Source: Lepidodermella squamata (taxonomy: Eukaryota; Animalia; Gastrotricha). From it: a stretch of DNA of 64,000 nt. Made by a program: the position numbers and the translations under genes. The DNA lies in assembly GCA_047495785.1 (NCBI GenBank), contig JBLDXI010000024.1, positions 186,001 to 250,000 of the forward strand. Direction: 5' to 3'. The notes beneath the pieces were generated by a model. The model did no database searches. It was not told where the DNA came from and saw nothing but the letters and a program-made list of their open reading frames with translations. Every line of letters starts with the position of its first letter. Within the stretch, counting starts at the first letter, position 1. Positions 37,001 through 64,000 of this stretch are shown piece after piece.

Positions 37001-38451
37001 AAAACCTTTAATAGCAGACAGCGAGGTTCCAAATGCATATGTACCCTCTAAAACCGCCCACACCACAAGTGCCGCATTTCCGATGCTATAGTCCTCGTAA
37101 TTAATGAGATAAACACCGTAGCAGAAACCAAGCGCGTATAGACCGAACATAAAGAAGAACATAGCCCCCATTATAAGGCCGGTGTAGAGCCCAGTCTTAA
37201 TGCCAACTTTTTTAACTTCGTTCAAGTTTGCAGCGTATCGTTCAACCTCCTCATTCTGGCGACCGAACGCCGTTACAGTTCTGATTGAAGTTATTACCTC
37301 TTGGGCGATTGCTCCCGCTTTCGAGTACGCCTCTGATTCGCTATTCGATTGCGAAAACGCGACTTTCACCATCAAGTAAGACGCTATGAGGTTAACTGGG
37401 GTGAGAGACAGCGTGACCAGGGCTAGTTTCCAGCCAGTGTATAACGCGACAATCGCGCAGCCGATGAAGGCTCCCATGTTTTGGACGAACATTCCGATTT
37501 TGTCACCGATACCCCGTTGAATTTGGCCGATATCTTCCACAAATCGGGACGTCAAAGCGCCCATCTCTTGTTTATCGTACCTGAAAAAATTCACGTTTAG
37601 GATGAAAGCTATTGGTATATGGAAGATTAAACCAACCAGGCGACATCCTGGCGTAACAAATTGCGAAAATAAGCTCGTCTGATAGATATTATTTGGTTTT
37701 CAGCCGAAACAGACCAAAAGAGCGATTGTATGAAGGAAACCACAAAAGACCCACCGCTGATAACTATGTAAATTAGTTAACGATCATGGAGTTTCTAGGG
37801 ACATATTGAAGCTTACTTGCAAAAGCAATGCACAGCTTTTTTATGGCAGCTAAGGATCGCTCCATGGAAGCATCGCTTGGGGTCATTTCAGTTGTACCGA
37901 GAGTTACGTTTGAACTGTTGCTCGCGAAAATCGTTGTAGAATTTTTGGGACAAAATTCCTGGGGAAATGAAGAAAGAAATCACACAGTTTGATTTCACCT
38001 CTGAACTCACATCTGGATTCATGAATTCGTCGATAACTGTGCCAAAGATCCAGCAAAGAAGCGGCATAACGGCTCCGTGAGCGATAGCGCCCAATGTGCC
38101 TGAAGACACATTGCATCGGTTTTATAGGTTAAAAATCTTATTAAATCTTTACCGAAAATGCATAAGAAAATGTCGAACTTGGAGGCGAAGCGAAACACTT
38201 CGAACCAACCAACAGCTGGGTCACCTGCTGATTTTTCAGGTTGGTCTTTCGCTGCATTCGAATCCTGAGCTTCCAACTTGCCAAGATTTTCCAACTCGAT
38301 CACGGAATTTTCCGCAGCTATAAATCAATCTTTAGAAAGCCATAGTATTAGGTAACAAAATTCGGAAACCTTTTCTCACGTCATCGGCTTCGCTGTCGTT
38401 GTTGAATGATGGATTGTTGTAGGCTTCTTTCTGCGATTCACCGGGCCCCAT
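34004..38451 (-). CDS. ABCB1: ABCB1/P-glycoprotein-like full ABC transporter, copy 2
   Basis: ATG 38451 ([13 protein letters not shown]). Two NBDs with intact Walker A, signature, Walker B and H-loop; AATAAA near 33872-33877 on the minus strand. Confidence 0.92.
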
Positions 38452-39029
38452 CTCCAAATAATTAAGCTGCTAAGCAAAAGTTATCACAAAATTGTTCCAG
38501 ACGATTAAGCTCCTGATTAGGATTTGCAATGCCACGTAATTAAGGTGTATGCTTTTTCACCAATTTGCGAGTTACACGGATGTGGAAGATAATTAAGGTA
38601 AGCTATGTTCGAGCTAATTTATTGTTCGCATTTGGCAGGCAGGGCTTTTCCCCCTTCCAGTGCTGCTGCTACGTCCACTAGAAGTGACATGCTATAACGT
38701 GCAGATGAAGCCTGGAGATCTGTATATCTCATCGTTGTAAAAACCGTCCCCGGTAAGCTATTATTATTGTCAGGCCGTGCTGTTTTTTGTCAAGCGCAAT
38801 TAGCTGCTTTAACGTGGCCTTATACAAGCTACCTATTATGTTAATCCTCCTCATTTCATCAATCATCTTTCAATGATCGAAAAAATGTCTGCGATTGTTT
38901 GCGTTCCAGTCAAAGGAATGACAAGTGTCGCCGATTGTTCTAATTAATTATCATTTACCACCACGCTCTGATAATTTTGCTACCAAGTTTGATATTCATG
39001 TAAAAAACATTGAAATTGTTTATTTATTT

Positions 39030-40600
39030 CTACGTCAACATTAAACTAAAGATGAACGCTTCAACTGTACAAGTTATGATGAAAATGATTGCGTAAAAAA
39101 TAGAGTCGATGACTCGAATACGTCGCATTTCGACAAAAGTGTCAAAAAATACGAGTTCAATCCGTTCTGCAAAATACCGCTCCCTGGCAAGGGCACAAGC
39201 TAGGACGGTGTAAACTGTACTGATCATGCCAACGACGATTTGCACTGACATCAGGACCGTAATGTACGGTATTTCGCTCGATTTCGGAATTGAATCGCCA
39301 ACAACTTTAAACAGAGAAGTTAACTTGAAATGTTCAACTAAAAAAAACAATTTCTTTTATACCTGATTGCATAATTGCGAAAGCTAAAACAACTGAAAAA
39401 TCGGCAAAAAGTTCGGAACGGGGTGAATTCAAATATGAGAAAATATACCAGTTATACTATATGTTGGTCTGAATTATAAAAAAACAAGAATAACATTATA
39501 ATTAAACGTAACGGGAATTGTTTAATATTACCTATCGGGCATTCGAGGTGGCATGAAAACTGAGCTGAATTGAAGAATGGCTAGGCAAAGACAAGGCAGA
39601 AACAAATTTACGATGTACAGCTGGTACTTTCGTCGAAATGAGAAGGTGAACACAGCCCGGTCATACCAGCCTTCCCAACCGGAGTAGGTGATGTTTTGAA
39701 TTTCGGCACGCATACCAAGCAATTCGAATATTTCGGCTGGGTTCATGAACTCCATTGAATTTCCACTGATACTTATGCCGGGTTCCTCTAATTTGAATCT
39801 GATGAAAAAGCTGTCCAGAAATGACTCGATAAATATGTCACAATCCTGGAGGCGTTTGAATGTATTATCCTTTTAAAAATTCCATTTGGAAAGGACAAAC
39901 CTGATAATCGAAAGGAAATTTTTTGAAGCTGAAAAATAATAAATCATTATTTCAAAAAAATCGGAAGCGCTGAAATAACTTAAACCTCATGTCGCAAAAA
40001 GACTCGTATACAGCAATAACCTGCCACGTCACGTGTCCATTCGGATAAATGTACATCGGGGTGTTGTCTATTTGCCTAGTTAAAAAGCCGCCTCAATTTT
40101 AGTGGAGTATATTATTTTTGAAATTTGATTTACGCTTCGATAAAGTCAGCGTCGCTAGCAGCATTGTTATGCGTTAACGCCGGGTGCCAGTAAGTAGCAA
40201 TGAAATCCATTAGTCTAGTTACATTGGACCATTGCAGTGTATCATTGGTCTTGCCCCATGAGATGCAAGGGTGAACCCATTTTATATCTAGCTCGGCCAA
40301 TAACGCAAATCTTTTATTGGTATAGAAATAAATACGCGAAATCTGTGTTTAGAATGCTTACTTCTGGTCCTTGTCAATCAGGTCGCGAAAGCTATAAGGA
40401 ATCATTGACACGTTGAGGAACAGGGGATCCGAATACTTTTCGACAGGGCGCGTGTTCGTTCGCAGGTTACACTTGGTGATCAGGTATTTTTTCACCTGCT
40501 CCTCCTGAGGAATAAATTTCCCCAGAATTTGGCATGTAGAAAAGTCGAGAAAATAGTGAATACCCAAAAAGGTCAGAAGTAAGGTATTAGGAAGCATCAT
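39030..40600 (-). CDS. Divergent Cys-loop ligand-gated ion channel subunit A (nAChR/5-HT3-like)
   Basis: Signal peptide, RPV, WHP, spliced Cys-loop CDMSFKKFPFDYQDC, pre-M1 FRRKYQLYIVNLFLPC and four TMs. Many small exons. Confidence 0.85.
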
Positions 40601-40747
40601 CTTTATTCGGTTGGAAATCTCTAGTGACCATATTGGGGCAAGGTAGTGTAATGATAGCTAGCGCGACACTTTCATTTTTCAGCCAAACTACGCGTTAGCT
40701 TATTTATTCAGCCGCTAAAGAATGCTAAATCAGCAGATGCCTACTAC

Positions 40748-42247
40748 TCAGGGCTCGATCATTTTTACGAAAATAGAGTGGTTGATTACGATAGCTGCGC
40801 TTATGATACCGCTATAAATGATAACGTCGATGGCACGCATAAATGACATTGTCATATAGTCGAGGCCGAAGAACCGGAACCGCCTCTGGACCATTTCGTG
40901 AGAGGCGATTGTGCAGGCTATTACGGCGTAAACCGAACACGCCCCGCCGATGAATATTTGCACCAGCAGGAAAATTGTTATGTACGGTATCTCGTCGGAA
41001 TGTGGAATGACTTTCGATATTTCGGAGAGCATCACAACAAGCGCAATTAAAACTGTAATGGAAAAAAAGACAGATTCTTTAAGAGAATTCGGAGCCATAC
41101 AATTATAACCAGTGATTGTGAATGATGATCTATCCGAAAATTGAGGAGGAATCAGTCCTGATACGAGTTGCATCACAGTTAAACACGAGCAAGGTATGAT
41201 GAGGTTAACTATATAGCTGGCGTATCGTCGTTCGAAAACGAAATTGAATGTCGCCCTGAAAGAGACCATAATGCACGATAAATACTCGAATTTTACTCAA
41301 CTACCGGTCGAAAGTTGAATTATCCCAGCCGAAATACGTCACCTGGCTGGTTTCAGCATAGACCGATTTCAACGACCAGACCGATCCGGAATGCACGAAA
41401 CTTTCGGTGTTGTTGTAAAGGCTCACACCACGGCCTATCAAGTTCAACTTGATCACCGTCGTTTCGTCAAAAAGCTCGATATGAATCGGGCAAATTTGCT
41501 TATCGAAAGGCCATTTTTTAAGCCTGAAAGAGAGTATATGGCTGAAAATTATAATCTTATGAAGCTAGCTATATTGCGACCTCAAGGAACAGTACGAAGT
41601 CATGACTGTAACGATTTGCCATATTACATCGCCAGTCGAATAGAAATACATGGGAGTGGTGGATGCGACTCTGAAATCCACCAGAAATGCTGTTTTCCCC
41701 TTATTATCAGCCAGAACTTACTCTTCAAAAAGTTGAGATGAATTGTAACTGTTTGAATGGATTAAAGTTGGGCGCCAATATTTTTTAGCCACGTCTAAAA
41801 CTCTGGAAACGTTTCTCCATTTCTTTGTCTCCTCGGATTCTCCTTTATGAGGAAACGAATTTAAGGTGGATCCTTTGGGAATCTGGCCGACCTACCCCAG
41901 AATACGCAAGGATGGTGCCATTCGAAATCGAGCTCAAGCAACAAGGAAAATCTATCTTTCGAAAATTCTGGCTGTTGAAAATTGAGTAAATAAAATTGTT
42001 TGTAAGACCTTTGAGTGCTATCTTCCAGCTCTCGAAAACTGTAAGGAATCATCTGCAAGTGCATAGACAGCGGGTTGCTGTACTTGACGACTGGCCGGCT
42101 GCTGCTGTTTAAACTGCACCTGTTGATCAAATACTGCTTCACGGCTTCTTCCTCTGGGATAAACTCCTGCGAGTAACCCAAAACCAGTCGAATGGATGTC
42201 AAAATAATGAGTATCAACATTTTAATTACGATAGCTCCAGAAATCAT
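40748..42247 (-). CDS. Divergent Cys-loop ligand-gated ion channel subunit B
   Basis: Signal peptide, SSRPV, WRP, Cys-loop CSLRLKKWPFDKQIC, FERRYASYIVNLIIPC and four TMs. Tandem paralog of subunit A. Confidence 0.85.
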
Positions 42248-42624
42248 CAAATTTTTGCCAGCTTAATAGTACAGTTCGCAAAGGTTTAAACAGCTGCTGC
42301 TACTATTATTTCATGCGGGAAGTGACACGACCCAGGAATAACGAAATATTTTATTGATCGGCAACGTTATGAAAGGTAAATCATTTAGTCGGAAATAACG
42401 AAATCTCTTGACCGAGTAATGATAGTCAAATTTTAAGGTAGAAGAATGAATTGCGAAAATAAACACAAAAAATAGAGAAACTATTGCACCGCACTCAAGT
42501 GTATATAACCGGACTAGCTGGAAATCGACTATAAATTCTCGATAGCATAAGAAACAGGCAGCAAGAGAGAAAAATACGATATTTCATAGAATTAATCAAA
42601 AGCAAAAAAAATAAATGATTATCT

Positions 42625-45600
42625 TCAACGAGTCAGCTGTTGCGCTGACCATAAACCGTAATAGAGACCGCGTTTAGCTAGGAGATCTTCGTGCGTGCCC
42701 AATTCGCGAACAACCCCACCTTGAATAACGGCAATTTCGTCAGCGTTTTCGATTGTCGATAAGCGATGCGCGATGACAAGAACAGTGCGACCCTCGCGGG
42801 CGCGATCCAACGCGTCTTGAACCACCTTCTCACTCTCTGAATCCAGGGCTGAGGTTGCCTCGTCCAGCAGAAGCAACTGCGGTTGGCGAATCAACGCTCG
42901 GGCGATGGCAACTCGCTGCTTCTGGCCGCCACTCAACTGGGCGCCTCGCTCGCCGACCCTGGTGTTATAACCCTCGGGCAGGGCCTTGATAAACTCGTGG
43001 ATATTCGCCATTTTCGCGACTTCTTCGATTTCTTCCTGAGACGCCGTTCCGCCTCGAGTAGCGCTCCTCAACCCATCGAGGCCGTACGAGATATTCTCGC
43101 CGATAGTTCGATCGAAAAGGATGGGCTCCTGCGAAACTAGGGACATCTTACTGCGAGCCCAGGGTAAGCTCAGGTCAGTCAGCGGGTTGTTGTCAAGTCG
43201 AACGTGGCCTAAATTCGGGTCGTAAAACCGCTCAAGCAGTTGGATAACCGTCGATTTTCCACAGCCACTCCCTCCGACCAGCGCAATAGTTTTGCCCGAC
43301 TCGACCTGCAAATTGATGCCGTGTAGGATGGTGGCGTTCGGGCGGGTCGGGTAGTAGAAATGAACTGATTCAACAGTGGCCCGGCCTTCGAACTTTTCTG
43401 GCTTGTAGGCATCGGCCGAATTCTCCCAATCAATCGCCGGCTTGCGGTCGAGCAGCTTGAAAATCTCAGCGACAGCGAGTTGGGCCTTGCGCTGGTCTGG
43501 CGCCATCGCGTTGGCTTGGCCGACTGCGAATGCGCTGAACATGATGGCGGCGAGGGCCGTGAACATGTCGCCGAATTCTGTCACTCCGTCCTTGATGAAC
43601 GTGGCGCCCGCGTAGAAGGCGGCCGAGTACGCGAAAAGCATCGAAGCTTCGCTCAACCCAAAGCAAATACCAGCAATCTGTCATAAAAAAAAATGAAGTA
43701 TTATCACGATTTCTCAAACAAAACTAAGTTTTTACGTTGATCTTGATAAGTTCTCGCTTATGACGGCTGACCAGTGGGGTGTTGAATAGGTCGATGAAAA
43801 TGCGATAGGCGCCGAGGGAGGTGACTGTTCGAATGTTAGTCGTCGACTGCACAAGGTATTTCGCCGCCTGCTCGACAAATTTGTCCTGAGAAACGGTGTC
43901 ACCGACCGCTTTGCCTTGAACCAGACCGCCGAAAATGAGGACAGGCACAAAGGCCAACATAATCAGGGTGATTCGCCATTCGAAGATGAAAGCAATGACT
44001 ATAGCAGCTAGCAAAGATGAAAGATTCTGGACCAGCCTGTGAAATAGTGTAAAATAAAGGCATTATTTTATATTATTATTATTATATTTTTTTTATAATT
44101 GACAGTTTGCAAGTGAAGAGTGGGTTAGGCGAGTTTTCAGTATTTTCCACCAAATCCCAACAGGAGCGCTGGCTAGAAAGGAACGATTGGTGGATTTCAT
44201 CGTATTCTAACCCTTTCGAATGGTTTATAGTTTTATTAGCGAAAAGGACAAAGTAAAAAATTTATTTATTATTTATTTAACCCAGATTTTCTTGAAGATT
44301 TAAAATTATCTAATTTCAGACCTTCCGGAAGAAACCATCCTTCTTGAAAGGCTGGAATCTGAAAACTATCCCCGACAATTCTTGTCTTGACGCGGGGCCA
44401 CCAGCTCGATTCCTCCCAATTTTTTTGAAATCTAATTTTGAAATTTTTTTAATGTTTTAATATCCAATATCCAGGGAGATTCTATATAGGTACCTCGAAT
44501 TACCATAATAATTTAAAAAATTGAAGTTTAAAAATTAAAAAATTAAAGTCCATTTTCTCAAATGTGATGACGCGATGACTATCAATCTCTTTTTCATATC
44601 ATTCGACACTATGTCGAAAAATTCGCCAAACCCCACTTTTCACTTGTTAACTTGGTCAATTATGATTTTTTCGAACTTACTGAGCCAGCTGTGAGCCAGT
44701 TGCATCGCGAACTTGCCCGCATTTGGTCGCCAAACGGCTAGCCAACGCTCCCGTCGCGTTGTCTTCATCATCGAACCAGGCAGTTTCTTGCCGCAGCATC
44801 GCGTGAAACGCCATTTTTCGAATACGGGCCACTAACTGCTCGCCGGCATACGCAAATCCAGCCATCATAACCGTGAATCCGATGAAGCAAGCCGCGCCAA
44901 TTGCGAGGAAAATCAGCGAGAACGTCAGGCCCTTCTGGTAACGCGCCTCCGGGTCGCAGTCAGTGAACGCGTCCATCATTCGCGAGAAAATGACCGAAAA
45001 AGCTGGCCAAACGGCGCCGCAAAGCAGCGACCCCAGCGTACCGGCGAAGATGTACGGAATTTCAGGTGTAGCCAAGCCCCACAGGCGTCGCATCGAAAAG
45101 TGATTCTTCACCAAATCGTCCTCCAACTTTTTCTTTTCAGCAGCAGTTAACGCGACAGTTTTGCTGTCAATGTCCTTCATATCGGCGACTTCCTTCGTCG
45201 GCGAAATGGCGCCATCGGCGTGACTTTTGCGGTTCGCCAACGCAGTTCGACGCTCTCGGGCGCTGTCGAATTCCAGGGTGACGTCAGACACATCTCGGCC
45301 CTTTTGCGCTTCAACCAACTTCGCGTAGATGCCCTTACGTTCAATCAGCTCGGTGTGAGTTCCAAATTCGCAAACTTGCCCGGCGTCGATTACAACGATT
45401 TTATCGGCGTTCATGATAGTCGACAGGCGATGGGCGATTGCGATGGTAGTTCGGCCGGCCCTGGCTTTGTCCAACGCGTCTTGAACAATCGCCTCAGACT
45501 CGGTGTCTAACGCAGACGTTGCTTCGTCGAGGAGTAGGACCCTCGGGTTTCGGACCAAGGCCCTGGCGATGGCGATTCGCTGTTTCTGACCACCACTCAA

Positions 45601-47862
45601 CTGGGCGCCCTGTTCTCCGACCATCGTTTCGTAGCCTTGGGGTAGTTTCATGATAAAACTGTGGGCGTTAGCCAGCCGCGCCGCTCGTTCGATTTCCTCA
45701 CGCGTGACGCTAGGGCAGCCGTATCGGATGTTTTCAAGGATCGAAGCTCCGAAAAGGATCGGCTCTTGGCTGACGACGCCAATCAACGAACGGAACCAGA
45801 AAATGTTGTATTCCCGCAAATCGACGCCATCAATCGAGACAGAACCGGCATCTGGGTCGTAGAAACGCTGTAAAAGCTGAATGATTGTCGATTTGCCACA
45901 ACCACTCGCGCCGACCAGGGCGACCGTTGTGCCTGGTTCAATTGAAAGCGAGACATTTTGCAGGATCGGAACGTCAGGGCGAGTCGGGTAGCGGAAAGAA
46001 ATGTTCTTGAATTCGATACGGCACGGGAATTTCTCGCCATTCTCGCGCTTTACGCCCAGCTTTGAGAACGGGTCGATTGTTGGCCGCCTATCGATGACTT
46101 GAAACACATTGTAGGCAGCAGAACGAGCCGCGGCGAAAGCCTGAATCGAGGTAACACTCATGCCCAGCGAGAAAGTGCCCATAATGACGGCGAAAAACGT
46201 TGTAGTCACAACTCCGATGGAATACCCAGGCTCGCCGCGGTTTATCAACTCAACACCGTACGAAAAACCAAGGGCATACGAACCGAAAATAATGAAGAAT
46301 GTCAGACCCATCATAACACCCATGACAACGCCTTTTTTCGTGCCGAATCGCCTCGCATCGTCGAGATTCGCCGCGTATCGTTCCACCTCAATGCGCTGGC
46401 CGCCGAACGACGCGACAGTTCTGATTGATCCGAGCACTTCTTGTGCAATCGCACCCGCCTTGGCGTAGGCATTTGTTTCATCCTGAGCCTGCGCGAACGC
46501 GAATTTCATCATGAGAACAGCGGCAACTGCGAGCAATGGAGAAAGCGATAGCACAACCAAAGCCAGCTCCCAGCCCTTGATCATAGCGATGACCATGCCG
46601 GCGATGAAAGCGGCGATGCTTTGAAATATTAGGGCGCATTTGTCGCCTATGCCTTTGTGAATTAGGAGGATGTCCTCGGCGAATTTCGACGTAACAGTGC
46701 CCGATTCTTGCTGATCGTACCAGCCGACGTCTTGGCGTATCAAATTGCGGAAAAATGCGATGCGGATGTTTTTCACCTGATTTTCAGCCGCCATGCCGAA
46801 CGCTGAGAAATGGATGTAGCCAACTAACCAGCTAGCAGCGCCAATGACTTGAAAATTTTGAAAAATTACCCGAAAATTTAATTAAAATCCAGAGTTTACT
46901 TACTGACAAAATAGATGATTTGCTCGAGCATCTTATCCAAAAACTCAGCCTTGCCTTGTTCGATCAAAGCACATGTAGCATTAACTTTTTCGAAAAATCC
47001 AGTGCCGTTTAGCGACTGGAGAATAGGAGCTAATGCCCAGGCCTCAGGGTTTGTCCAGATTATTGTCACAATTTCTTGTTCCAGCTGGCTTTCGGACTTG
47101 GTCAAGAAGTCATCGCACGTCAATTTGAAAACTCTGGTTATGTTGTCTATCAAGTCCTTATGATCAGCCATCAGATACGTAAGATTACATTGTTGCTATA
47201 TAACAAAGACAAGGGGAATTAAGCTGCAAAATGTACAAGGCGAAAAACGCTATTACCGATGGGTCGGTGAAGCCGTCAATTACGTTACCAAAAATGACAA
47301 CAGATAGAGGCTGAATAATACCATGGCCAATAGCAGCAAGGATTCCGATGAGCATCAATGCCGTGTCATATTTCGACGCGAATCGGAACTTAGAAACGCG
47401 ATAGTTAAAGGCTTTGATTAAAAAATTAAGCATCAACAGCTCACCACTTCGAAAAACCCAACACTAGGTTTGACTTCTTTCGGAGCCTTTTTCTTCCCAC
47501 TAGGGTCTGTTTCAGCAGTTGTGTCAGGGGTGGCTTTTTGTCCGCCAGTTTCGACATAGGCGACATCGGGGAGTTTTTTCAGTTCAATACCATCACTCAC
47601 CGGAGGTTCCAAGCTCACTGAAAATTGAAACGATGTTTTATATAAATCTTGAAAAACTGTCGTCTGAATTTGAAAGCGTAACTAAAAGGTGCGAGAATTA
47701 GTCACCAACACAACGGAAAATCAACTAGCTACTTCTTCTCACCTGGTTCGTAGGAAACGTTTTGTTTATTGTTCTGTCATATAATTTCAATAATTAGCAA
47801 GCAATTCGGTAGCAAGCCTCCTTAAAGGCTAGGTTCTTTTCGTAACAAACCCGAGACGTCAT
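42625..47862 (-). CDS. ABCB1: ABCB1/P-glycoprotein-like full ABC transporter, copy 3
   Basis: Two complete TMD/NBD halves. Probable start at 47862 via small exons (MTSR|NNKQNVSYEP|VSLEPP); the start is less certain than the body. 644-bp intron at 44037-44680. Confidence 0.9.
44095..44663. mobile_element. MITE-like non-autonomous element with about 45-bp imperfect terminal inverted repeats, inside an ABCB intron
   Basis: Left end ataattgacagtttgcaagtgaagagtgggttaggcgagttttc versus reverse complement of right end ataattgaccaagttaacaagtgaaaagtggggtttggcgaatttttc. AT-rich non-coding interior. Confidence 0.7.
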
Positions 47863-51207: not shown

Positions 51208-54200
51208 TCAGTAGGATTCATAGATCGCAAACTCGGATCTCTTCAGGACCATCTGCGTCTGCGCGAATTAGTCACGATAGGCGAGTTTAATAATAGTAAT
51301 GACATTCAAGTGCATTCGGGTGAAAGTGCGTTAGTGAAATTTACCTGAATGGGTGCTTCGCCGGACGGCTGGTCGAAGAACGACCGGTAATTACTGCCGC
51401 CCAGGGAGGAGTTGTCGTACCAGGACGACCCTCCACCGCCACCACCACCACCTGAACCACCACCACCACCACCATTACCTGTACCACCACCACCCGCATA
51501 GCCGGCGGGGAAATCACCTGAATAACCCGACGAGGAGGAATGAGCTGGGAACGACCGATTATTCGGCATTTGAGACGAAGAAGGCAGCCGCTGGTGAGCC
51601 GGCGGTGGTTGAGGGTACGGTGCCGGCGGGTTCGCACCCGTCGACGTCACGTACTGCTCAACTAGCGGCGTCGAACCGCCGCCGCCTGATGATGTCGAAT
51701 ACTGAGGAGTCGTAGCAGACGACTGCCGGCGTGGGTCCGGTCCGTAAGAACTGGTTCGCTGGGTCTGGGAACTACTCCGACTGGAAGACGAGGCGGGTGG
51801 CGCTCCTGATCCACTACTCCGGTGGCTGCTACTAGTCCGCCGCATCGAAGATGAGGACGACGAAGAAGAACCAGGAGGACGAGACGGGTCGGCCTGGCTC
51901 TTACGACGACTCGAATCGTTCGGGTCACTGCTGTTCGACTGAGACGGGAAGTCTGGCTGAGATTTATGATGTTGCAAACTCCTGCCCGGCTGCGGTTCGG
52001 ATGACTGCTTCTGAATTTGCGGATATGAAGCCGACAGGGGTATGGGCGTCGGCTCTGGTATGCCGCTCGGAGTAACCGCTGGCGGTTTTTCCTTCGACCC
52101 ATCGAAAGAATTGGTTCGTTGCCTGAACCCTGAGCCAGACGACGCATTTCTCGACGACGACGAAGATGACGAGGACTGGCCATTGCCGCTTATCGGTAAA
52201 GTTCCAGGCCGTTTAGAGGAAGAACTCGATTCTTTCGAACCAGACGAGCCATTGCCATTGCCCTCAGCGTTAACAGTACTACTTTTCTTTGGAATTCGGA
52301 AACTGCCCAGCAAACTGCTACTAGGAGCCCCTTGGCTTGCAGCCGGTTGCTGCGGTGTAGTTTTCGACGAGCTGTTCGAGTTTTTCGGCGTCGTCTTCGA
52401 GGCACTTCCGCCCCCTGCTGCCGGGTCGGGTGTTCCCGTCGGTGTTGTCGACGGAGTTTTCTTCGGAATTTTCATATTGGTTGGTAGCGGTTTCGTAAAA
52501 TCTGACAAGGCCGCCGGCTTGGCTGCTTGGCCTTCGGTGCGTGGCTTATCTTTCTTGGAATCAGCTGACCCAGTAGTAGCGGCGTCTTTCTCAATTTTAC
52601 GCTGTTTAGCTAGAATCGGGCCAGACTTATCGTCGCTAATCGTTCGCTGGCGTTGCGAAGTGGCCGCGGTGGATGAAGCAGGGCCTGGTGCTGCTTTCGC
52701 CACGGATGTTTTCAAGGTAGCTGAACCAGCTGGATTGGCAACAGGCGCTGGTCTCTTAACCGGGCGCGATAAACTGGCTTTCAACTCTGCCGGCGAACTG
52801 GGTACAGGATCGCGGTCAGTGAACGCGAAGGCGTCCTCCTGCGACTCTTGAGCGTTCTTAAACAGAACCCGATCGAGAGCGGCTCGGGCAGCTTGACGAC
52901 TATCACCCGTGTCATAAATATCAGACGATTGAAGCAGCTTCATTCCGCCTTGCTTGCTAAAACTCGACTTCAGTGCCGCAACAGCCGGGGTCAAGCCACG
53001 CGAAGTCGACATAGGACGATTCGGGTCATTACCACCCGATGCATTTGTCGATTTATTAGCCGATGAGCTGGATGAAGTGTCCGGCAGCGAGTTACTGCTA
53101 GACTGTTCTGACTCGTCGGAAGAAATCACGCGTTGCTGCATACGATTACTTCCGATTCGCAGCTGACCCGACATCGCGCTGTTGGATCGAGACTGGTTTC
53201 GATTTCCCATCATCATCGACAATGGCGGGCTAGTTCGGGTGTCGTCGAAAACTGGCGAGGCTTCATAAACGCCTTGTTCACAGATAACCAAGCCTTTTTC
53301 GTCTTCTTCGCTAGCTGGTCGAGCAGGTAGTTCCGATTCGAGAACGGGCGGAGACGGCGAACCTTCGATGTTTGCATCGACCGGGTCATTGTTCATACCA
53401 GCCATCTTCTCGTCAGACGGGGTTGACTGAACACATGACTCCTCTGATTCTTCATTGCCATGTTCTGAGGGGTAGCTGAAAGCTGGAGTCATCGCCATTG
53501 GCGTATTGCTTTGATGGTATTCGCTGCCACCTCCTTGTAAATGGGTGAAGAATTCACTTCCGTGCCGAGAACCAGCCGGCGATTGTTGCATCGAAAACGC
53601 GGGCGAGGAAGCCGATGGAGACGTTGATGGTTTCCGTACTCGTTTTGCCTGGGTCGGTGGCTTGACCTTACCGGAAACTAAAACAGGCGACATCTGATGC
53701 TCACCAGTTTCGCTGACAGTGGGCAGGGATGGGCGTTTTTTCGACGAAGAAGCTGCTGCCGGGCTGCGAACAGCCGTGTTTTGAACAGCTGCTGCCGCCG
53801 AACCCGGTGAAATAACCAAAGGAACTTTCCTCGGCCGCCCTCTAGTTCCAGTGTGTATTGTCGTAGTCCGAACTGGAGCCGGTATGCTGATAGTTGGCGG
53901 TGGCGGGTCAAAACTTGTGATATTTGACGAGTTCGGAAGCCACGAGGTTGAGTTCAGCAAACGCGTCGGTGATAAATTTTCAGCGGACGGGCTGTACATC
54001 GCAGAATTATTCGCTACACTGGCGCTATTTGCTGCCGCTGCTGCTGCATTCATTGCATCACTCTCCGATAAAATTTCTTCGAGGATCGACGGCTTTTTTG
54101 ATTTCGCAGAATCACTGCAGGCTGATGGTGACAGCGCCATATTGACATCTTGCTTTTCGTCTTTAAGTAGGGAAGAACTCAGCGGAGCAGGCAGGAAGCT

Positions 54201-55869
54201 CTGCCAAATGAAAGCCCCAAGCGCTGACAATGACCAGGTCGCTTTGAAAACTTCAGAAATGGAATCAGTAAAGCTTTGAACTGAATCGTCAGTAGTTTCA
54301 GATAACATTGACTCCAAGGAATCAACTGCTATTGTCGGATCGTTGAAAGAAGCGCCGCATTCACGGGGGAAAGTTACTGTTGTAGATACGAACTTGGACT
54401 CAATCGGATGACGGCATTTCAGCGTAAACTTTGTCAATGAATGAACAGATATATTAAGTGGTACGCAAATGCTGTGACGGCTTTGATGATCGAGGCCACC
54501 TTTAGGCAACATGCTTTCGCAAGAATTCAGCAGTAACGAATTGAAGCGCTGTTGCAGCCGCAGTAAATGAGTGATGTGAGATAAACTTTTCGTATCACAA
54601 AATGGAATCGCCTCAACCCAGTGACATGGGTCAAATGCATTAGGATCAAGATCCTTTTCCCATTGCACTGAAATCGCCAACCGCATATTATGATTAGGAA
54701 GACTCTGTATATAAAGAGATGTGCAAAATAAAATGCTGAACATCATCAAATATCCTCCTACCTGTAAAATTCTGTCACTTCCAGATAAATTAAGGAGAGC
54801 TCTGGGAAATTCAGGCGTTGCCTCTCGCATAGAGGGCAAGCAACTGTGATTGCTCGTTGTCTTGAGAAATTGCAAAACGCCAGCGTTTCGACAAAGATCT
54901 TGTATTTTACGATAAATAGCAAAGCAGATCAAAACAGGTTTTTCCAGCACCAAAACGTAAACACCAGATACCGAAGCGTATGTAAAAACATTGGAAACGT
55001 GATTATGAGCCACCTAGGAAGATAACAAAATGCATTTAAATCACTAATTTGCTGAAATATTGCATACCTGAAGGCTGAAAGACGATTTAGATTGTAAAAA
55101 TTTGACATTTAACCGATATTCTGTTAGTTTTGCGACGTCATTGGTCAGCTGAGGCTGAGATGGATGGCAATAATAAACAACATATGGTCGAAGGAAACAA
55201 GATTGGCCGGATAAAATGTGTCCGTATCTAGATGAAAGCACGGATTCGCAGGATGGCAAAGGTTCCATATGGATAGCATCCCCGTTTATATCGCTGTATA
55301 TTGACAGAAGGCCATTCATAATCTTAGACAGTTCCCCGTTGTCGTCATGAGCAGCTTCGAGCATTGATTTGATCAATTCAACAAACGTCGTGAACACTGA
55401 ATTCAGATCGGAAGGCGCTTTTAGTAAACTGATAATGTCAAGTTCGGCATCATGAACTGCCGGGTGATGTAGGGAAACGCGCTCGATCGCCCCACGGCTG
55501 TCCAATTTAACAAATATGGTGAATGAGAGGACTCGCAAATCGATGACGTTATCTTAATCCAAAAGAATTAGCGAACAGGAGCAATGATAGGACAATTTTA
55601 CCCTTAGAATAAGCAACTTCGAAGCCAGATCGTTTAGCCACATCAGTAAAAGCTGTGCGCCATTTCTCCGCATCGTTTTTGCAGTCATTTTTAACATATG
55701 CTTTACCGTCGATCTGAAAGTAGAATTTTCATGGTTAATGGTTAATGGAAAATGGCCAATGACCCACTTGTTTCACGCAGCTAATCCAGTCTAAATATTT
55801 GCGGACGCCGGAATCAAATTTATCAAGAAGTGTCACCACACTTTTAACCTTTTCATCGCTGGCAGCCAT
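51208..55869 (-). CDS. MED1: Mediator subunit MED1-like (Med1 domain + long Ser/Pro/Gly-rich disordered tail)
   Basis: ATG 55869. FTIFVKLDSRGAIERVSLHH and IPFCDTKSLSHITHLLRLQQRFNSLLLNSC resemble conserved MED1 blocks; S-rich tail with KIPK motifs. The 3' end is either 51306 or a last exon 51258-51208. Confidence 0.7.
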
Positions 55870-56937: not shown

Positions 56938-57740
56938 ATGGCGTCAGTATGTTGGCTTCTTTCATCTCTCGCCTTGCTTTTATTGATCGGAGATTGCAGT
57001 CTTGCAACTGTCGCTCCTTTCACTGAGAACGAAATGTATTTCATCGAGAAAGAGAGCCAGAAGCCATGCACTTATTTCATGGGCAAAGAGCGAAATGGTC
57101 AAGATGCTCGCAAGTCTAGGAGAGAGTCGAGTTTGGTGAACTGCACCTGGTATAAGGATCAAGCTTGCTGTAAACGCACCGAAGTAACTTCGGTGTTCTC
57201 AAAAATGTATCCCTTGAACTTGGCATCGACGTAAGAAATTAATTTGTCCATTCTGTTTTGTCATTATTAAACTTTGTTCTCTTCAGGCGCTGTCGAAATT
57301 TGATCAACTATATGCTTTGCTATTGGTGTTCGCCTGTTCAATATAAGTGGTATTACAAGTAAGAGAAAAATTCCCCGATAAATCATTGACCATTAATTCC
57401 AACTTCCTTTATTTTAGACGTCTATTTATATGCAAGGACTATTGCGATCTTGTTTACACGGAATGTGCTAGTAAGTGTCTAATACCTATGACGCGCAATT
57501 TTTTACGCGGAACTAATAATTTCAGAAGCCACCTGGAATAACTTTGAGTTGGGTGTGAAGTACCGCTCGGGCACACAATTCTGCGAGGCTCAAAAATTTG
57601 AAGTTGTTCAGTCATATCCATGTTTCGACTTTGACGAAAGCATTTTTGATGCCGCTTCCAGTTTGCAGCCAATGTTGCGAAATTCTATTTTGATTTTTGC
57701 TGCCAGGGCTGTTGCAAGTTTCTTGACAACTTCGTACTGA
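56938..57740 (+). CDS. Secreted, probably GPI-anchored Cys-rich protein with folate-receptor/riboflavin-binding-type domain
   Basis: Signal peptide; CTWYKDQACC, CRNLINYMLCYWCSP, LFICKDYCDLVYTEC; hydrophobic C-terminal tail; four exons join in frame. Confidence 0.75.
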
Positions 57741-58288: not shown

Positions 58289-59899
58289 TTAATCGGCTTC
58301 GCTGTTCTCTACTACCTGAGGATATTGCAATCTAGATATTCTGTGAAAGGCAGCTAGATCCTTTGCGACTAGGGAGTGCGAAAGGCGGAACTGCAGAGGC
58401 TCGATCTTCTGGTTCCAAGCCGGATTTTGAGCGTGAACCATCTTGTCAGTATCGATGACATTTTTCATAAGAGTTTCAATGCCTCGCATTCTGAACACGT
58501 AGCCGCGAGTGTCGCTGAGATGAGCACTAAAATCAATAACATCAGGTGACCGAATGATGGCTCCAACTGGGAATATGAAAGGCCGTAAAATGGTGTATTG
58601 GCGAGTAATTTTTGCGCTCGCGAGCAGTTGTTCCTTAATTTGAATCGGAGCGCTGACGTAGACCAGCCGGAAAAATGGGTGAACACTCATGACGATAATA
58701 TGAGAGCCATACAGCAACTTGTCATCGACCGTTCCCACCTTAAAATAATTATTTACTTGAAGAATTGATACATTGCAAATTTTACTGTTACCTGAGCGTG
58801 ACCAATTGAAATGTAATAAGGCCATTTGTAGAGAACAAAAGGCGAACCACCCCTGAGGGCGTCTTGAACCGAGTCAAACGGTGCTTTCGCTTCGCCTGAA
58901 ATGAAAGAGAAAATTAAATGTTTCGATTTCAGCTCGTATATGAATTAAAATATTACCTTTGGGCCACTGATGATATATGCAATCGCCACGTATGTCACAT
59001 TTGAAGACGCGAAGAGGATCGAGCGAGTATATGTAGTAAAGGGTGTTATTTACAGTTATCGGTATCCAGTTTATTTCAGTTCGCTGTAGCCGGGGTTTGA
59101 AATCTTCTGGAACATTGAGCTTCACAAGCTGGTTTTTGTCGTAGTTCCACAAAAACATTCGACCCCGGATGTCAGACTGGTCGCGATCGAACTGCCAAAT
59201 ATGGAACGACAGGAAAATTGTCTGATTCCACCTGAATAGGCGTGGATCCATCGGGCCGTCGGACCTGTAGGCGTAATGGCAGTTTGTAGCCGTCGGAATG
59301 CCGAGAATGCTTCCGCGTTCAAGAGCTGTCCAATCGGTATCGAATTCGCGCTTGTAAAGAAAATTTTCGGGGTAAGTATTTCGTGTTTTAATATCAGGAT
59401 CTTTGTTGTACAAGACATCGTAGTGGGAGAGCCAAATTCGTTGAACTGTCAAAATTGAGCCATCGTCTTTGTCTATGATAGCTGGGCCAAGACTGACATA
59501 AACGTTCTCTTCGAATGGATCGTATATTGCCTCGCTGAAAAATTGCTCGACTTCAGGCGAAAATGAGTAGACCAGAGATGTTGTAACAGGGGCTGAGACG
59601 TTGAAAAAATTACGACCCCGATCAGCGAAAACGCGACCGTTTTGAATGTAATTGCTGATGAATGTTCCTTTATGCCGCGGCCCGTCCAGGTGGTTACTCA
59701 GGGAGCGCTTGTGAGCCAGGCGAAATTTGATACCACCACCATCGCTGCCGAAGCAGGCGACGAAAAGCGAAAATGGCACGATGAAAAGAAGGACAAAAAG
59801 AGCGAAAAATGTCACAGCGCATTTTCGACCGCCCGACGTCGTCGCCCACCACCGTCGTAGGCGCAGAATTTTCAGTTTTACCTCGCTCACCGACGTCAT
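58289..59899 (-). CDS. Type II membrane glycosyltransferase-like protein (Bmt/GT91 beta-mannosyltransferase or GH130-like beta-propeller), 498 aa
   Basis: Exons 59899-58957, 58895-58792, 58738-58289. Short basic N-tail plus TM; motifs GPMDPRLF, EINWIP, YSLDPLRVFKC, LRGGSP. Confidence 0.6.
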
Positions 59900-61040: not shown

Positions 61041-63869
61041 ATGATCGCGTTTGCCCGCGGTTCATCGTTTGTCGCTGCCGCTGTGTGGTTCGTTGTCTGG
61101 ACTGGTCTGTCGTTTTTTGCGCACAACTGCGCGCGCCACGTGCTCAATGCCGTGAACAGAGAGCCCAACTCGGCGCCGGACGAAAGTAATGCGCCGGCAA
61201 GCCCATCTGTTATGTGGTTTTGCATTTTCCTGTTAACGCTGTTTCAAATCGGTGAGAAATTGTTAATACGCACCAGGATTTTGTTTTTATATCGAAAATA
61301 ATTTTTAGGAATTGGAGCCCTTGTGTTACTTGTGAGCAAGCGCGTTTACCTAATTTTCGGCATCGGGCGCACTGTTTATCGTTCTGGTTCGCGACCGTCC
61401 TCACCCACGTCGAAAGTGGTGCCTAATGGCACAGCAAATGGAAACGGATACGTCGTTAATGTCGGCACAGCGGAGATGGAAAGCGAAATAATGCCATCGA
61501 TACCCTGGCAAATTCAAATAACTTTGGCCCTGTCGCATCTCATCGCTACCGCTGCTACCAATGCGTCAATAGCCTTCGCGACTCCGGCTCCAGCCTTTGT
61601 AATTAAAGCGTTCGAACCCATTACTACAGCTATTCTCGCCGCGTTGGTGGGCGGAAAACGTGTAGAAACACACGTTATCATATCCCTACCTCTCGTCGCG
61701 TTAGTCTTGGAAATATATTTCTGATCGATGTGTAAAATAATTTAAAATTTAGAATCGGAGCTGTCGGTTTCACATGGCGGTCGGATTTCCAAATCGCCAA
61801 CTTTTTCGGAATATTCATGGCCGTAGTATCCAACTTGATGTACGGCCTTCGAAACATCACCACGAAGTCTCTGCAACACGACCATAGCGGAAACAAAACT
61901 ATTTCGAACCTCGCCCAGTTGCACATTTTAGCTCAGATGTCGATTTTTTCCGGTACTATTTTGGCATGGCTGATTCTAATGCAAACGCTTACCACACCTG
62001 GTCTCTTGAGCCACTTTCTAAAAAGCGACGTCATCTACGACAGCGTCCTTAGTGGATTGTTCCACGTTTCCTACACCATCATCAGTGTGCTAGTCATGCT
62101 CACTGTTCTAACCGTTGTGGCCCATGCAACAGCAAATCTTGGCAAACGGGTCATAATTTCGCTCCTGTGAGTTGCTAATTTTCGAGTTCGAAATATTTTC
62201 TAAAACCATTTTTCTGCCAGGTTCTACATCATCGGAATGCAATACCCTACTTTTTCCAACGTGCTGTTTGGCCTAGTCTTTTTGATTGGACTTTTAATTT
62301 ATGCAAATTCGAACCGCCTGAAATTTAGTGAGGAAATTGAAGCTAGTGACCTAATTGGTACTAATAATGTTTTACGTCATAGGTGAAACCCAGGAGAGCC
62401 AAACATTGATTTTGACTGGAATTTTCACAGCATTCGTGCTGGCATGTGCACTATTCCCGGGTAGCTTCATGGCCTCCACCGCTTCAGTTTCGAAGCCGAC
62501 GCTAGTCGACGACCATCGACCGATTCCATTACCTGTAGCCGTTACTCCCCCCACGTTTAGGGCCAGAAAGGATTTCTTCATTACGAAGGCGAACAAGATT
62601 AACTACATCAATGTGGACTCATCCAACATCGATACCTTGTATCCCAAGTGAGTCAAATTTTTCCAATAAGATCCCAGATCAATATATCTAATTTGTAAAT
62701 TTCAATCCGCAGTTTTCAAACTACACTGAGTGCTGAAGAAGAAGAGTTCTTGAATGTTGACTTGTTTGCCAACCCGGATCGAGCGGATTGGCTGTCAAAG
62801 CGGTTGCCGATTGCTCACGATGTGGTGCTCGAGGCTCAACGCATTCATTATCAATTATTTTCCCGTCTGGTCAAAGGCTACAAGAGAGCCGTTTTAGTTA
62901 ACGTCTTCACGTGGGCTAATCGCGGTGATCACTTGATCACGATTGGCGAGCGTGTTATTTTGTCCCGGTTCAACTTAACATTAGACTACTACTGCTTCTA
63001 TCCCGGCGATGATTGTGATTTCCACGGAATTTCTCGATCAAAAGATTTGGTAGTATTCATTCAAGGCGCGGGGTATATTGGCCACGAAGCTCATGTTCCT
63101 GTCGTCAAGAAAACCATTAAGGCTTTTCCGAACAACCGCGTGATATTCTTTCCAATCAGCGTGTGCTGTACCAGTAAGGAAGAAATAGCAGCCTATCAAA
63201 ACATTTTTGTTACTCACAACGATTTATGGCTTCTCCTACGTGACCGATTTTCTTATGAGGTATGTCTTGTCATTATTTTACCCTTATTCGTCATGTAGCT
63301 TGGAATATGATTTGCAGATTTCAAAGAAGTCATTCACCAAGACGAAATGCTACCTCTCGCCAGATTCCGCCTTTGCAGTTGGCCCTCAGAAACTGACGAT
63401 TGTCCCAACTCACGACCTCATTTGGGTAAAACGTGATGACTGGGAAAACTACAGAGATAAAAACCACGACGAGCTTCCGAAAATTCCGAAAAATATGACT
63501 GCTCTCATTCAGGTAAACTCTAAGCTAACGTTGAGATGTTTTTATTATCTGTGATTTTTTATCTGAAAGGACTGGGACGAGCATTTCATGGACCAGCAGA
63601 CACCAGACTTCATGGAGGATCATCAGCTCAAATCCATGAGTGCATTTGTCTACCTTGCTCGAGGGAAAGTTGTGATAACTGACCGGTTACATGCCCATCT
63701 AATGAGCACCTTGTTGGGGAAACCTAATATAGTTGTAAATTCGATTACGCGTAAGCAGCAAAATTATTATGATACCTGGGAACACAGCATAAAAACATCA
63801 GCATGCGTTGATTCAGCTACTGAAGCGTTGTCAATTGCGAAGAATTTCATTACCATGTTGAGGCTTTAA
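61041..63869 (+). CDS. TPT/SLC35E-type phosphate translocator fused to a polysaccharide pyruvyltransferase (Pvg1/EpsO-like), 809 aa
   Basis: Exons 61041-61251, 61309-61699, 61753-62166, 62221-62327, 62383-62647, 62713-63259, 63318-63512, 63570-63869 total 2430 nt, all GT-AG and in frame. TPT motifs IKAFEP, SNLMYGLRNITTK, ANLGKRV; transferase motifs NRGDHLI, RDRFSY, SPDSAF, VITDRLHAH. Confidence 0.8.
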
Positions 63870-64000
63870 TCAGAATTTATGTTTTTCTATGCTTTCTGGA
63901 ACGATGTTGAAATCCGGCAATGTTTGTGTAAATAAATTATTTGCGGTAAATAAAAACCTGGTATTTCAAACAATATTGCTTTTCGGTATTACTTCACTTT

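What the first reader, a model, noticed from the sequence alone, without database searches (positions are those of the whole stretch)
61041..63869. Animal gene fusing a putative Golgi PEP transporter to a pyruvyltransferase: a self-supplying glycan pyruvylation module
Seen: eight exons splice in frame into one 809-aa ORF comprising a TPT-type multi-pass domain, one extra TM (TLILTGIFTAFVLACALFP), a Pro/Thr stem and a pyruvyltransferase domain. Established: these transferases use PEP and release phosphate. S. pombe splits the job between Golgi Pvg1 and separate TPT-family Pet transporters. Plastid phosphate translocators bind substrate through Lys/Arg residues in the IKAxEP, RN and KR motifs, all retained here. 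Inference: the extra type-II TM places the enzyme in the lumen, so PEP-in/Pi-out antiport could be coupled to catalysis. Pyruvylated glycans are reported from sponges and some gastropods, but the animal enzymes are poorly characterised. I cannot say how widespread this architecture is.
Basis: partly seen in the sequence, partly recalled or inferred. Interest (0 to 1): 0.88.

Follow-up and report, generated by a model that had tools for sequence, protein, structure and literature searches.

The report
Transporter fused to glycan pyruvyltransferase
This invertebrate gene really does make one messenger RNA for a membrane transporter joined to an enzyme that puts pyruvate on sugars; the same fusion occurs, unstudied, in snails, bryozoans and copepods, and so names likely enzymes for animal glycan pyruvylation.

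Summary
Eight exons (61041-63869, +) splice in frame into an 809-aa protein. In one public run, cDNA-like contigs remove all seven introns at GT..AG, including the key 62327/62383 junction.

- **N half:** a 10-helix transporter of the TPT/plastid-phosphate-translocator type. It keeps the phosphate-binding Lys, Lys-Arg and probably Tyr.
- **Link:** an 11th membrane helix and a Pro/Thr-rich stem.
- **C half:** a clear homologue of fission-yeast Pvg1 (family profile E 3e-69). It keeps all three proposed catalytic residues.

The architecture is not unique to this genome. About 27 protein clusters carry it, from gastropods (including Aplysia), a bryozoan and copepods. All named ones are annotated only generically, without a tested function. 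The intron at the seam sits at the same place in three phyla, so the fusion is old. I found no paper describing it.

The proposed mechanism, PEP in and phosphate out feeding a lumenal pyruvyltransferase, is topologically coherent and the most economical reading, but it is inferred. One plant PEP-specificity residue is not matched (Tyr instead of Asn), and I could not obtain the yeast Pet transporter sequences for comparison.

A BMT-like glycosyltransferase gene lies head-to-head with the fusion, and this arrangement is conserved in bryozoans. The scan's other notes on this feature cover this same stretch, not other DNA.

The parts
61041..61251 (+). Exon 1: start codon, transporter helices 1-2 (aa 1-70)
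   Evidence: splice model. The N-terminus aligns with Watersipora P0153 from residue 13. Intron 1 is removed in the X1 contig.
61309..61699 (+). Exon 2: long loop and helices 3-5. IKAFEP lies at 61602-61619; its Lys170 corresponds to Lys204 of GsTPT2.
   Evidence: Pfam TPT E 7e-6. Profile alignment to 5Y78. Motif coordinates.
61753..62166 (+). Exon 3: helices 5/6-9. SNLMYGLRN lies at 61826-61855 (Tyr231 at the Phe263 site), HVSY at 62060-62086, and GKR at 62123-62152 (Lys332/Arg333 correspond to Lys362/Arg363).
   Evidence: Pfam TPT E 1e-9..
62221..62327 (+). Exon 4: helix 10 and a short basic tail (..NRLKFS)
62328..62382 (+). Seam intron (55 nt, GT..AG) between the transporter and the enzyme. 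If it were retained, a TGA at 62384-62386 would end the transporter, and an ATG at 62367 could start a separate type-II enzyme.
   Evidence: Spliced out in the X1 contig. The intron sits at the same place in Watersipora L004 and Tigriopus L005. The ORFs of the unspliced form are listed.
62383..62647 (+). Exon 5: 11th membrane helix (62403-62459) and the Ser/Thr/Pro-rich stem
   Evidence: In the orthologue's AF2 model the matching helix is 326-346, followed by a disordered stretch at 350-366.
62713..63259 (+). Exon 6: N half of the pyruvyltransferase. NRGD carries Asp535 (corresponds to Pvg1 D106; 62915-62932). LLRDR carries Arg639 (corresponds to R217; 63233-63253).
   Evidence: Pfam, alignment A2, profile against 5AX7, residue roles from PMC4872226.
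63318..63512 (+). Exon 7: middle of the pyruvyltransferase (PDSAF and DLIWVKRDDWE motifs)
63570..63869 (+). Exon 8: C half of the pyruvyltransferase. ITDRLH carries Arg749 (corresponds to Pvg1 R337; 63675-63728). Stop codon at 63867-63869.
   Evidence: Pfam E 5.5e-7..
63870..63920 (+). 3' untranslated stretch covered by the transcript contig
   Evidence: The X1 contig ends at 63920.
58289..59899 (-). Head-to-head neighbour: a two-exon, type-II, BMT/GT91-like putative glycosyltransferase. It probably belongs to the same pathway.
   Evidence: Pfam BMT E 0.0027, below the cut-off. Atlas nearest clusters carry BMT. A homologue lies upstream on the opposite strand in L001 and in Watersipora L004.

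Best explanation
One gene makes one mRNA for an 809-aa membrane protein. It has a 10-helix transporter of the plastid-phosphate-translocator (TPT) type, an 11th helix that carries the chain back across the membrane, a flexible stem, and a Pvg1-type ketal pyruvyltransferase.

The most likely function is in the Golgi. The transporter half would bring cytosolic phosphoenolpyruvate into the lumen in 1:1 exchange for phosphate. The enzyme half would use that PEP to put a pyruvate ketal on a terminal sugar and release the phosphate that drives the next exchange.

**Shown:** the architecture, the single spliced transcript, conservation across phyla, retention of the phosphate-binding and catalytic residues, and purifying selection.

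**Inferred:** PEP as cargo, Golgi location, lumenal orientation, and coupling between transport and catalysis.
For: - **Splicing and frame:**. The cDNA-like contig spans both halves with the seam intron removed.
- **Transporter half:** the family profile hits the solved translocator 5Y78 at E 2.8e-22 over all ten helices, against about 2e-3 for the nucleotide transporter SLC35B1. Foldseek on the orthologue model ranks 5Y78 first among transporters. Lys170 and Lys332/Arg333 match the phosphate ligands Lys204 and Lys362/Arg363, with a conserved Tyr next to Tyr339.
- **Enzyme half:** the family profile hits Pvg1 5AX7 at E 3.2e-69 over the whole catalytic domain. D106, R217 and R337 are kept as Asp535, Arg639 and Arg749.
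- **Yeast precedent:** Pvg1 uses PEP and depends on separate Golgi PEP transporters, Pet1p and Pet2p.
- **Topology:** the AF2 model of the 38.5%-identical bryozoan orthologue (pLDDT 88.7) shows 10 helices, one extra helix, a disordered stem and a two-lobed enzyme. Pvg1 itself is a type-II protein.
- **Conservation:** the fusion is kept in gastropods, a bryozoan and copepods, with the seam intron at the same place.
- **Selection:** 24 of 27 listed differences between the window and the transcript contig are synonymous.
Against: - No transport or enzyme assay exists for any member.
- At the site where plant PPT has Asn and TPT has Phe263, which is said to clash with PEP, this protein has Tyr and the family has Phe/Leu/Tyr. 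That rule comes from homology models of plant proteins only about 20% identical to this one.
- His185 of the translocator aligns with Thr here.
- The Atlas feature search on the transporter half returned generic nucleotide-sugar and DMT clusters, so the subfamily is not settled.
- The model is of an orthologue, not of this protein, and its pTM of 0.60 says nothing reliable about how the two halves sit together.
- Location and orientation rest on analogy with yeast.
Confidence: 0.6

Rival explanations
1. The fusion is real, but the transporter half carries something other than PEP. It could be a nucleotide sugar for the acceptor glycan, another phosphorylated C3 compound, or phosphate export only. 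PEP would then reach the enzyme by a separate carrier.
For: - Tyr rather than Asn at the plant PEP-specificity site.
- The Atlas feature search gives mostly nucleotide-sugar transporter clusters.
- Basic residues at the matching places also occur in SLC35B1 (alignment).
- The Pfam TPT family also holds nucleotide-sugar transporters (own knowledge).
Against: - The profile match to the phosphate translocator is about 20 orders of magnitude better than to SLC35B1.
- The full Lys/Lys-Arg phosphate set is nearly invariant in the family.
- The fused partner needs lumenal PEP and releases phosphate, which is exactly the counter-substrate of a strict 1:1 phosphate antiporter.
Confidence: 0.2
2. The transporter half no longer transports. 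It serves as a multi-pass membrane anchor, or as a sorting or oligomerisation module, for the enzyme.
For: No functional data exist. The long, low-complexity loop (aa 89-139) is specific to this species.
Against: - The substrate-site residues (IKxxEP, SN..RN, HVxY, KR) are nearly invariant across phyla.
- Differences in the transporter exons are almost all synonymous.
- An 11th helix already provides an anchor.
Confidence: 0.08
3. The working products are two separate proteins made from the same locus by retaining the seam intron. The transporter would end at the TGA at 62384-62386, and a type-II enzyme would start at the ATG at 62367. The spliced fusion would be a minor or non-functional form.
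For: - Both ORFs exist in the unspliced sequence.
- Contigs drop rare variants, so retention cannot be excluded.
- A true stand-alone type-II relative exists in another animal-like contig.
Against: - The only transcript form recovered is spliced.
- Uninterrupted fused ORFs occur in other species, including a 757-aa ORF on a Logan contig and RefSeq models.
- The frame is kept across the seam in three phyla.
Confidence: 0.05

Closest known systems
S. pombe Pvg1p (Golgi ketal pyruvyltransferase, PDB 5AX7) together with the Golgi PEP transporters Pet1p/Pet2p
   Same: The enzyme family and fold are the same (E 3.2e-69; Foldseek TM 0.76 by target). The proposed catalytic Asp and two Arg are kept. 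The enzyme part has the same type-II layout, and it has the same need for lumenal PEP supplied by a membrane carrier.
   Different: In yeast the enzyme and the carriers are separate genes. Here they form one polypeptide joined through an extra helix. The subclade holding this protein has QGAGYIGH and FPISVC where Pvg1 and the mollusc forms have GGGN and FPQS, so the acceptor may differ. I could not compare with the Pet sequences.
Plastid phosphate translocators (TPT/PPT/GPT/XPT; GsTPT2, PDB 5Y78/5Y79)
   Same: Ten-helix DMT fold. The Lys and Lys-Arg phosphate ligands are kept, with a neighbouring Tyr. The strict 1:1 phosphate antiport of that family would fit the reaction stoichiometry.
   Different: Identity is only about 20%. 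The organism is an animal without plastids. There is no transit peptide. Thr replaces His185, and Tyr sits at the Phe263/Asn262 specificity site. It is fused to an enzyme.
Uncharacterised TPT + PS_pyruv_trans proteins of gastropods (e.g. Aplysia californica XP_012943188, Lottia, Haliotis, Littorina, Physella, Elysia, Patella), the bryozoan Watersipora subatra, and Tigriopus copepods
   Same: Same two-domain architecture with the extra helix. They align end to end (38.5% identity with Watersipora, 26-31% with molluscs and the copepod). The seam intron is at the same place.
   Different: The window's protein has a longer loop between helices 2 and 3, and its transporter half is split over four exons rather than one. 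None of these relatives has been studied.
Bacterial pyruvyltransferases (CsaB, WcfO, WbbZ) and their GT2 fusions
   Same: They belong to the same Pfam family PF04230 and use PEP as donor.
   Different: They are cytoplasmic enzymes acting on lipid-linked precursors, so they need no PEP carrier. Their fusions are to glycosyltransferases, radical-SAM domains or hydrolases, not to a transporter.

Membership tests
Pvg1-type polysaccharide pyruvyltransferase (Pfam PF04230) | Sequence match over the whole catalytic domain | tested here: met
   Pfam hits on exons 6 and 8. The family profile including the window's exons hits 5AX7 at E 3.2e-69, covering residues 17-340 of 348.
Pvg1-type polysaccharide pyruvyltransferase (Pfam PF04230) | [quoted passage not shown] | tested here: met
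   Asp535 (NRGD), Arg639 (LLRDR) and Arg749 (DRLH) align with them. Their roles come from PMC4872226.
Pvg1-type polysaccharide pyruvyltransferase (Pfam PF04230) | Two-lobed alpha/beta (GT-B-like) fold behind a single membrane helix and a stem | tested here: met
   Tested on the orthologue P0153, not on the window protein. AF2 pLDDT is 88.7. Foldseek's top hit is 5AX7, TM 0.76 by target.
Pvg1-type polysaccharide pyruvyltransferase (Pfam PF04230) | Transfer of pyruvate from PEP to a sugar diol | not testable with these tools
   Needs an enzyme assay.
Plastid-phosphate-translocator-like TPT transporters (Pfam PF03151) | Ten-helix DMT fold with a TPT-family sequence match | tested here: met
   Pfam TPT on exons 2 and 3. 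5Y78 at E 2.8e-22 over 297 positions. AF2 helices 1-10 and Foldseek hit to 5Y78, TM 0.72 by target.
Plastid-phosphate-translocator-like TPT transporters (Pfam PF03151) | Phosphate ligands Lys204, Tyr339, Lys362 and Arg363 (GsTPT2) | tested here: met
   Lys170 and Lys332/Arg333 align exactly. The conserved Tyr308 (HVSY) lies one column from Tyr339 in the HMM alignment, so that one is approximate.
PEP/phosphate translocator subtype (plant PPT) | Small or polar residue (Asn262 in AtPPT1) in place of Phe263, to make room for C3 of PEP | tested here: not met
   Tyr231 here, and Phe, Leu or Tyr across the fused family. The protein is therefore not filed as a plant-type PPT. The working hypothesis of PEP transport rests on the fusion partner, not on this site.
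S. pombe Pet1/Pet2/Pet3 Golgi PEP transporters | Closer kinship to Pet proteins than to other TPT or nucleotide-sugar transporters | not testable with these tools
   No tool returned Pet or plant PPT sequences. The word-based searches were capped at 8000 candidates and gave only close relatives.
Animal TPT + pyruvyltransferase fusion family (deposited but undescribed) | Both domains in one ORF, joined by an 11th helix, with the seam intron in the same place | tested here: met

The most novel reading that the evidence does not exclude
This family is the long-missing animal glycan pyruvyltransferase, the enzyme behind the pyruvylated glycolipids of Aplysia and perhaps related glycans elsewhere. 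It would work as an obligatorily coupled machine: each PEP admitted by the transporter half is used by the tethered enzyme, and the phosphate released is the counter-ion for the next PEP. This would be a natural transporter-transferase fusion dating back at least to the protostome ancestor, acting together with the conserved neighbouring BMT-like glycosyltransferase.
Probability: 0.4. Interest if true: 0.8.

Novelty: new variant of a known kind. Interest (0 to 1): 0.66.

Why it matters
Pyruvate ketals give glycans a negative charge much as sialic acid does. They have been known on Aplysia glycolipids and sponge proteoglycans since the 1990s. The review I checked names no animal pyruvyltransferase, and none of my literature searches found one.

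This gene and its orthologues, including one in Aplysia californica, are direct candidates that can be tested.

The fusion is also a Rosetta-stone argument. Independently of yeast genetics, it suggests that a TPT-type carrier and a Pvg1-type enzyme work together. It offers a compact one-gene module for engineering pyruvylation, a use already pursued with Pvg1. Natural fusions of a Golgi-type carrier to the transferase it feeds would be useful models for substrate channelling.

Tried and rejected
- **Splice enumeration:** a brute-force enumeration of splice paths timed out. I replaced it with a targeted test of donor and acceptor options.
- **Homologue searches:** three homologous-protein searches each scored only the 8000 candidates sharing most words and returned few hits, so they could not give the full taxonomic range or distant TPT relatives.
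- **Apparent transporter-only relatives (P0162-P0171):** where I could read their contigs (L001-L003), the 324-aa call is the first exon of a fused gene in L001/L002. L003 shows only the transporter exon before its contig ends. They are therefore no evidence for a separate gene.
- **Other long pyruvyltransferase hits:** these are GT2, radical-SAM or hydrolase fusions, not transporter fusions.
- **Atlas feature search:** on the transporter half it did not discriminate subfamilies.
- **Literature:** searches for the fusion or for animal pyruvyltransferases found nothing beyond two reviews.
- **Folding this protein:** the window's own spliced protein has no reference, so I did not fold or look it up as a whole. 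The Watersipora orthologue served as a proxy.
- **Organism:** I did not identify it. The window's other genes (ABCB transporters, proteasome ATPase, tyrosine phosphatase) and earlier notes are consistent with an invertebrate animal.
- **Tree:** the pyruvyltransferase tree is the quick version only, because the careful search did not finish.
Full report
**1. What is in the sequence**

Between 61041 and 63869 on the + strand, eight exons join in frame. Their coordinates are 61041-61251, 61309-61699, 61753-62166, 62221-62327, 62383-62647, 62713-63259, 63318-63512 and 63570-63869. The seven GT..AG introns are 53-65 nt long, and the product is one 809-aa ORF. Two other donors for intron 4 would also stay in frame (815 and 819 aa).

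Pfam, run exon by exon, finds the TPT family on exons 2 and 3 and PS_pyruv_trans on exons 6 and 8. The helix TLILTGIFTAFVLACALFP is residues 382-400, and a Ser/Thr/Pro-rich stretch follows it.

**2. Is it one gene?**

The rival reading was two abutting genes. Unspliced, the transporter frame ends at a TGA at 62384-62386, and an ATG at 62367 opens the enzyme frame with its own membrane helix.

Public reads argue against this. Run X1 yields a 1999-nt contig covering 61580-63920 from which six introns are removed at GT..AG, among them 62327->62383. A 451-nt contig removes intron 1. Run X2, a DNA run with two haplotypes, keeps the introns.

X1's record does not say that it is RNA. Its content, with all seven introns cleanly removed, shows that it is cDNA. 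Contigs cannot exclude a minor intron-retaining isoform.

Of the 27 listed differences between X1 and the window inside the exons, 24 are synonymous. The three replacements are conservative and lie in loops or the stem. Both halves and the linker are therefore under purifying selection.

**3. The enzyme half**

A profile of the C halves, including the window's exons, matches fission-yeast Pvg1p (PDB 5AX7) at E 3.2e-69 over the whole catalytic domain. The next hit is the bacterial WbbZ.

The Pvg1 paper proposes D106 as the acceptor-side catalytic residue and R217 and R337 as PEP ligands. It describes Pvg1p as a type-II Golgi protein fed by the transporters Pet1p and Pet2p (PMC4872226; PMC6801904). 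By the alignment, these three residues are Asp535 (NRGD), Arg639 (LLRDR) and Arg749 (DRLH) here, and they are nearly invariant in the family.

The subclade that holds this protein differs from Pvg1 and the mollusc forms in two motifs near the acceptor side: QGAGYIGH for GGGN, and FPISVC for FPQS.

**4. The transporter half**

A profile of the N halves matches the red-alga triose-phosphate/phosphate translocator GsTPT2 (5Y78/5Y79) at E 2.8e-22 over 297 positions, that is, all ten helices. The nucleotide transporter SLC35B1 scores only about 2e-3.

The structure paper (bioRxiv 10.1101/169169) names Lys204, Tyr339, Lys362 and Arg363 as the phosphate ligands. Mutating them greatly reduces exchange, and the cationic trio is offered as the basis of strict 1:1 exchange. 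With the construct offset of 89, these align as follows:

| GsTPT2 residue | Residue here | Motif |
|---|---|---|
| Lys204 | Lys170 | IKAFEP |
| Lys362/Arg363 | Lys332/Arg333 | GKR |
| Tyr339 | Tyr308 (one column off) | HVSY |

All are nearly invariant in the fused family.

Two sugar-side residues differ. His185 aligns with Thr. Phe263, which the paper says clashes with C3 of PEP and is Asn in Arabidopsis PPT1, is Tyr231 here and Phe, Leu or Tyr in relatives. The protein therefore meets the test for a phosphate-translocator-like carrier but not the one available test for the plant PEP subtype. I could not obtain Pet1-3 or plant PPT sequences, and the Atlas feature search was not discriminating.

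**5. Topology**

The window's spliced protein has no reference, so I folded the end-to-end orthologue from the bryozoan Watersipora subatra (P0153, 38.5% identity over 792 columns) with a 51-row alignment. The model has mean pLDDT 88.7. It shows, in order:

- ten transporter helices (residues 4-317);
- an 11th helix (326-346);
- a disordered stretch (350-366);
- a stem helix;
- a two-lobed alpha/beta domain.

Foldseek returns Pvg1p first (TM 0.76 by target) and GsTPT2 as the best transporter (0.72).

In ten-helix DMT carriers both ends lie on the same side of the membrane, which is the cytosol for Golgi nucleotide-sugar transporters (own knowledge). Pvg1p has a cytosolic N-terminus and a lumenal catalytic domain. 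Joining the two head to tail through the enzyme's own anchor therefore needs no change in the topology of either part. The short basic tail before helix 11 fits a cytosolic loop, and the conserved cysteines and sequons in the C half fit a lumenal domain. Orientation and compartment remain inferred. The pTM of 0.60 does not allow any statement on contacts between the two halves.

**6. How widespread is it?**

A full HMMER scan with exon 6 found 270 relatives at E 0.001 or better. Among the best 150 and the proteins fetched later, about 27 carry a matching transporter half in front of the enzyme. The named ones are:

- **Gastropods:** Aplysia californica, Elysia marginata and E. crispata, Haliotis asinina and H. 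rufescens, Littorina saxatilis, Physella acuta, Lottia gigantea and Patella caerulea.
- **Bryozoan:** Watersipora subatra.
- **Copepods:** Tigriopus californicus. A Tigriopus kingsejongensis relative (P0010) gave no matching transporter half in my tests.

The annotations are generic: 'uncharacterized', 'pyruvyl transferase domain-containing', 'similar to pvg1' or, misleadingly, 'triose phosphate/phosphate translocator, chloroplastic'. The ESM Atlas has a 60-member cluster with both Pfam families, mostly from Mollusca. A 757-aa uninterrupted fused ORF on a Logan contig is 40% identical to this protein.

The intron at the seam sits at the same place in this genome (KFS|ETQ), in Watersipora (CRFK|DTN) and in Tigriopus (AMSS|EQC). 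That points to one old fusion of a carrier gene with a downstream type-II enzyme gene, no later than the protostome ancestor.

In a quick maximum-likelihood tree of the enzyme domain, all fused forms fall in one clade (SH-aLRT 97). Some 'solo' rows fall in the same clade, and many of these are fragments. One (P0005) is a true intronless stand-alone type-II enzyme on an animal-like contig. Other long relatives are fusions to GT2, radical-SAM or hydrolase domains.

**7. Neighbourhood**

A two-exon type-II gene with a weak BMT (GT91) match lies head to head with the fusion at 58289-59899 on the minus strand.

Its homologue lies upstream on the opposite strand in a bryozoan-like metagenome contig (L001) and in the Watersipora chromosome (L004), but not next to the Tigriopus gene. 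Conserved divergent pairing suggests a shared pathway, perhaps synthesis of the acceptor glycan. This is a lead, not a result.

**8. Mechanism and rivals**

The best-supported reading (about 0.6) is a Golgi module in which the carrier half imports PEP against the phosphate that the tethered enzyme releases. It explains why a phosphate-antiporter-like carrier is welded to a PEP-using, phosphate-releasing lumenal enzyme, and why the arrangement has been kept across phyla. It also mirrors the genetically defined Pvg1 + Pet system of yeast.

The main rival (about 0.2) is that the carrier moves another substrate. Smaller rivals are a non-transporting anchor role (0.08) and separate proteins made by intron retention (0.05).

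**9. Novelty**

The parts and the two-protein system are known, and the fused proteins are already in public databases. I found no paper that mentions the architecture or any animal pyruvyltransferase. The library searched covers only open-access papers and bioRxiv preprints.

I class it as a new variant of a known kind. The case is well supported, moderately surprising and directly testable, and it names candidate genes for the pyruvylated glycans reported from Aplysia and sponges. The scan's other notes on this feature (s1-395110, s1-395223) concern this same stretch, not other DNA.

Noticed in passing
window 58289-59899 (-); L001 4830-6259 (-); L004 309-1688 (-): A BMT/GT91-like type-II gene lies head to head with the fusion gene. 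The same divergent pairing is found in a bryozoan-like contig and in Watersipora subatra, but not next to the Tigriopus gene.
   Followed up: partly
window 62328-62386: If the seam intron were retained, the transporter would end at the TGA at 62384-62386 and an ATG at 62367 would open a stand-alone type-II enzyme. One locus could therefore in principle give either a fusion or two proteins. Only the spliced form was seen.
   Followed up: partly
window 62328-62382; L004 about 10978/11705; L005 about 14147/14213: The intron between helix 10 and helix 11 is at the same place in three phyla, marking the seam of an old gene fusion.
   Followed up: yes
L006 4908-6170: An intronless stand-alone type-II pyruvyltransferase (P0005, 36% identical to the window's C half) sits on an animal-like contig with SNF-transporter and trypsin/Sushi genes. 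No transporter half lies upstream of it.
   Followed up: partly
window 28997-46794 (-): Several large exons encode ABC-B type transporter halves (ABC_membrane + ABC_tran). They look like tandem P-glycoprotein-like genes.
   Followed up: no
window 51306-55013 (-): A 1235-aa uninterrupted ORF that is very rich in Ser, Pro, Ala and Gly. I did not run Pfam on it. The adjacent ORF at 55044-55538 gave no Pfam hit.
   Followed up: no
window 56938-57234 (+): A short ORF with a signal-peptide-like start and a sub-threshold folate-receptor family match (E 1.6e-4).
   Followed up: no
window 61580-61801 and 62143-62275 (run X2): The DNA run shows two haplotypes of about equal depth. They differ by up to about 8% in and around introns 2 and 3, which indicates a very heterozygous or duplicated genome.
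   Followed up: no
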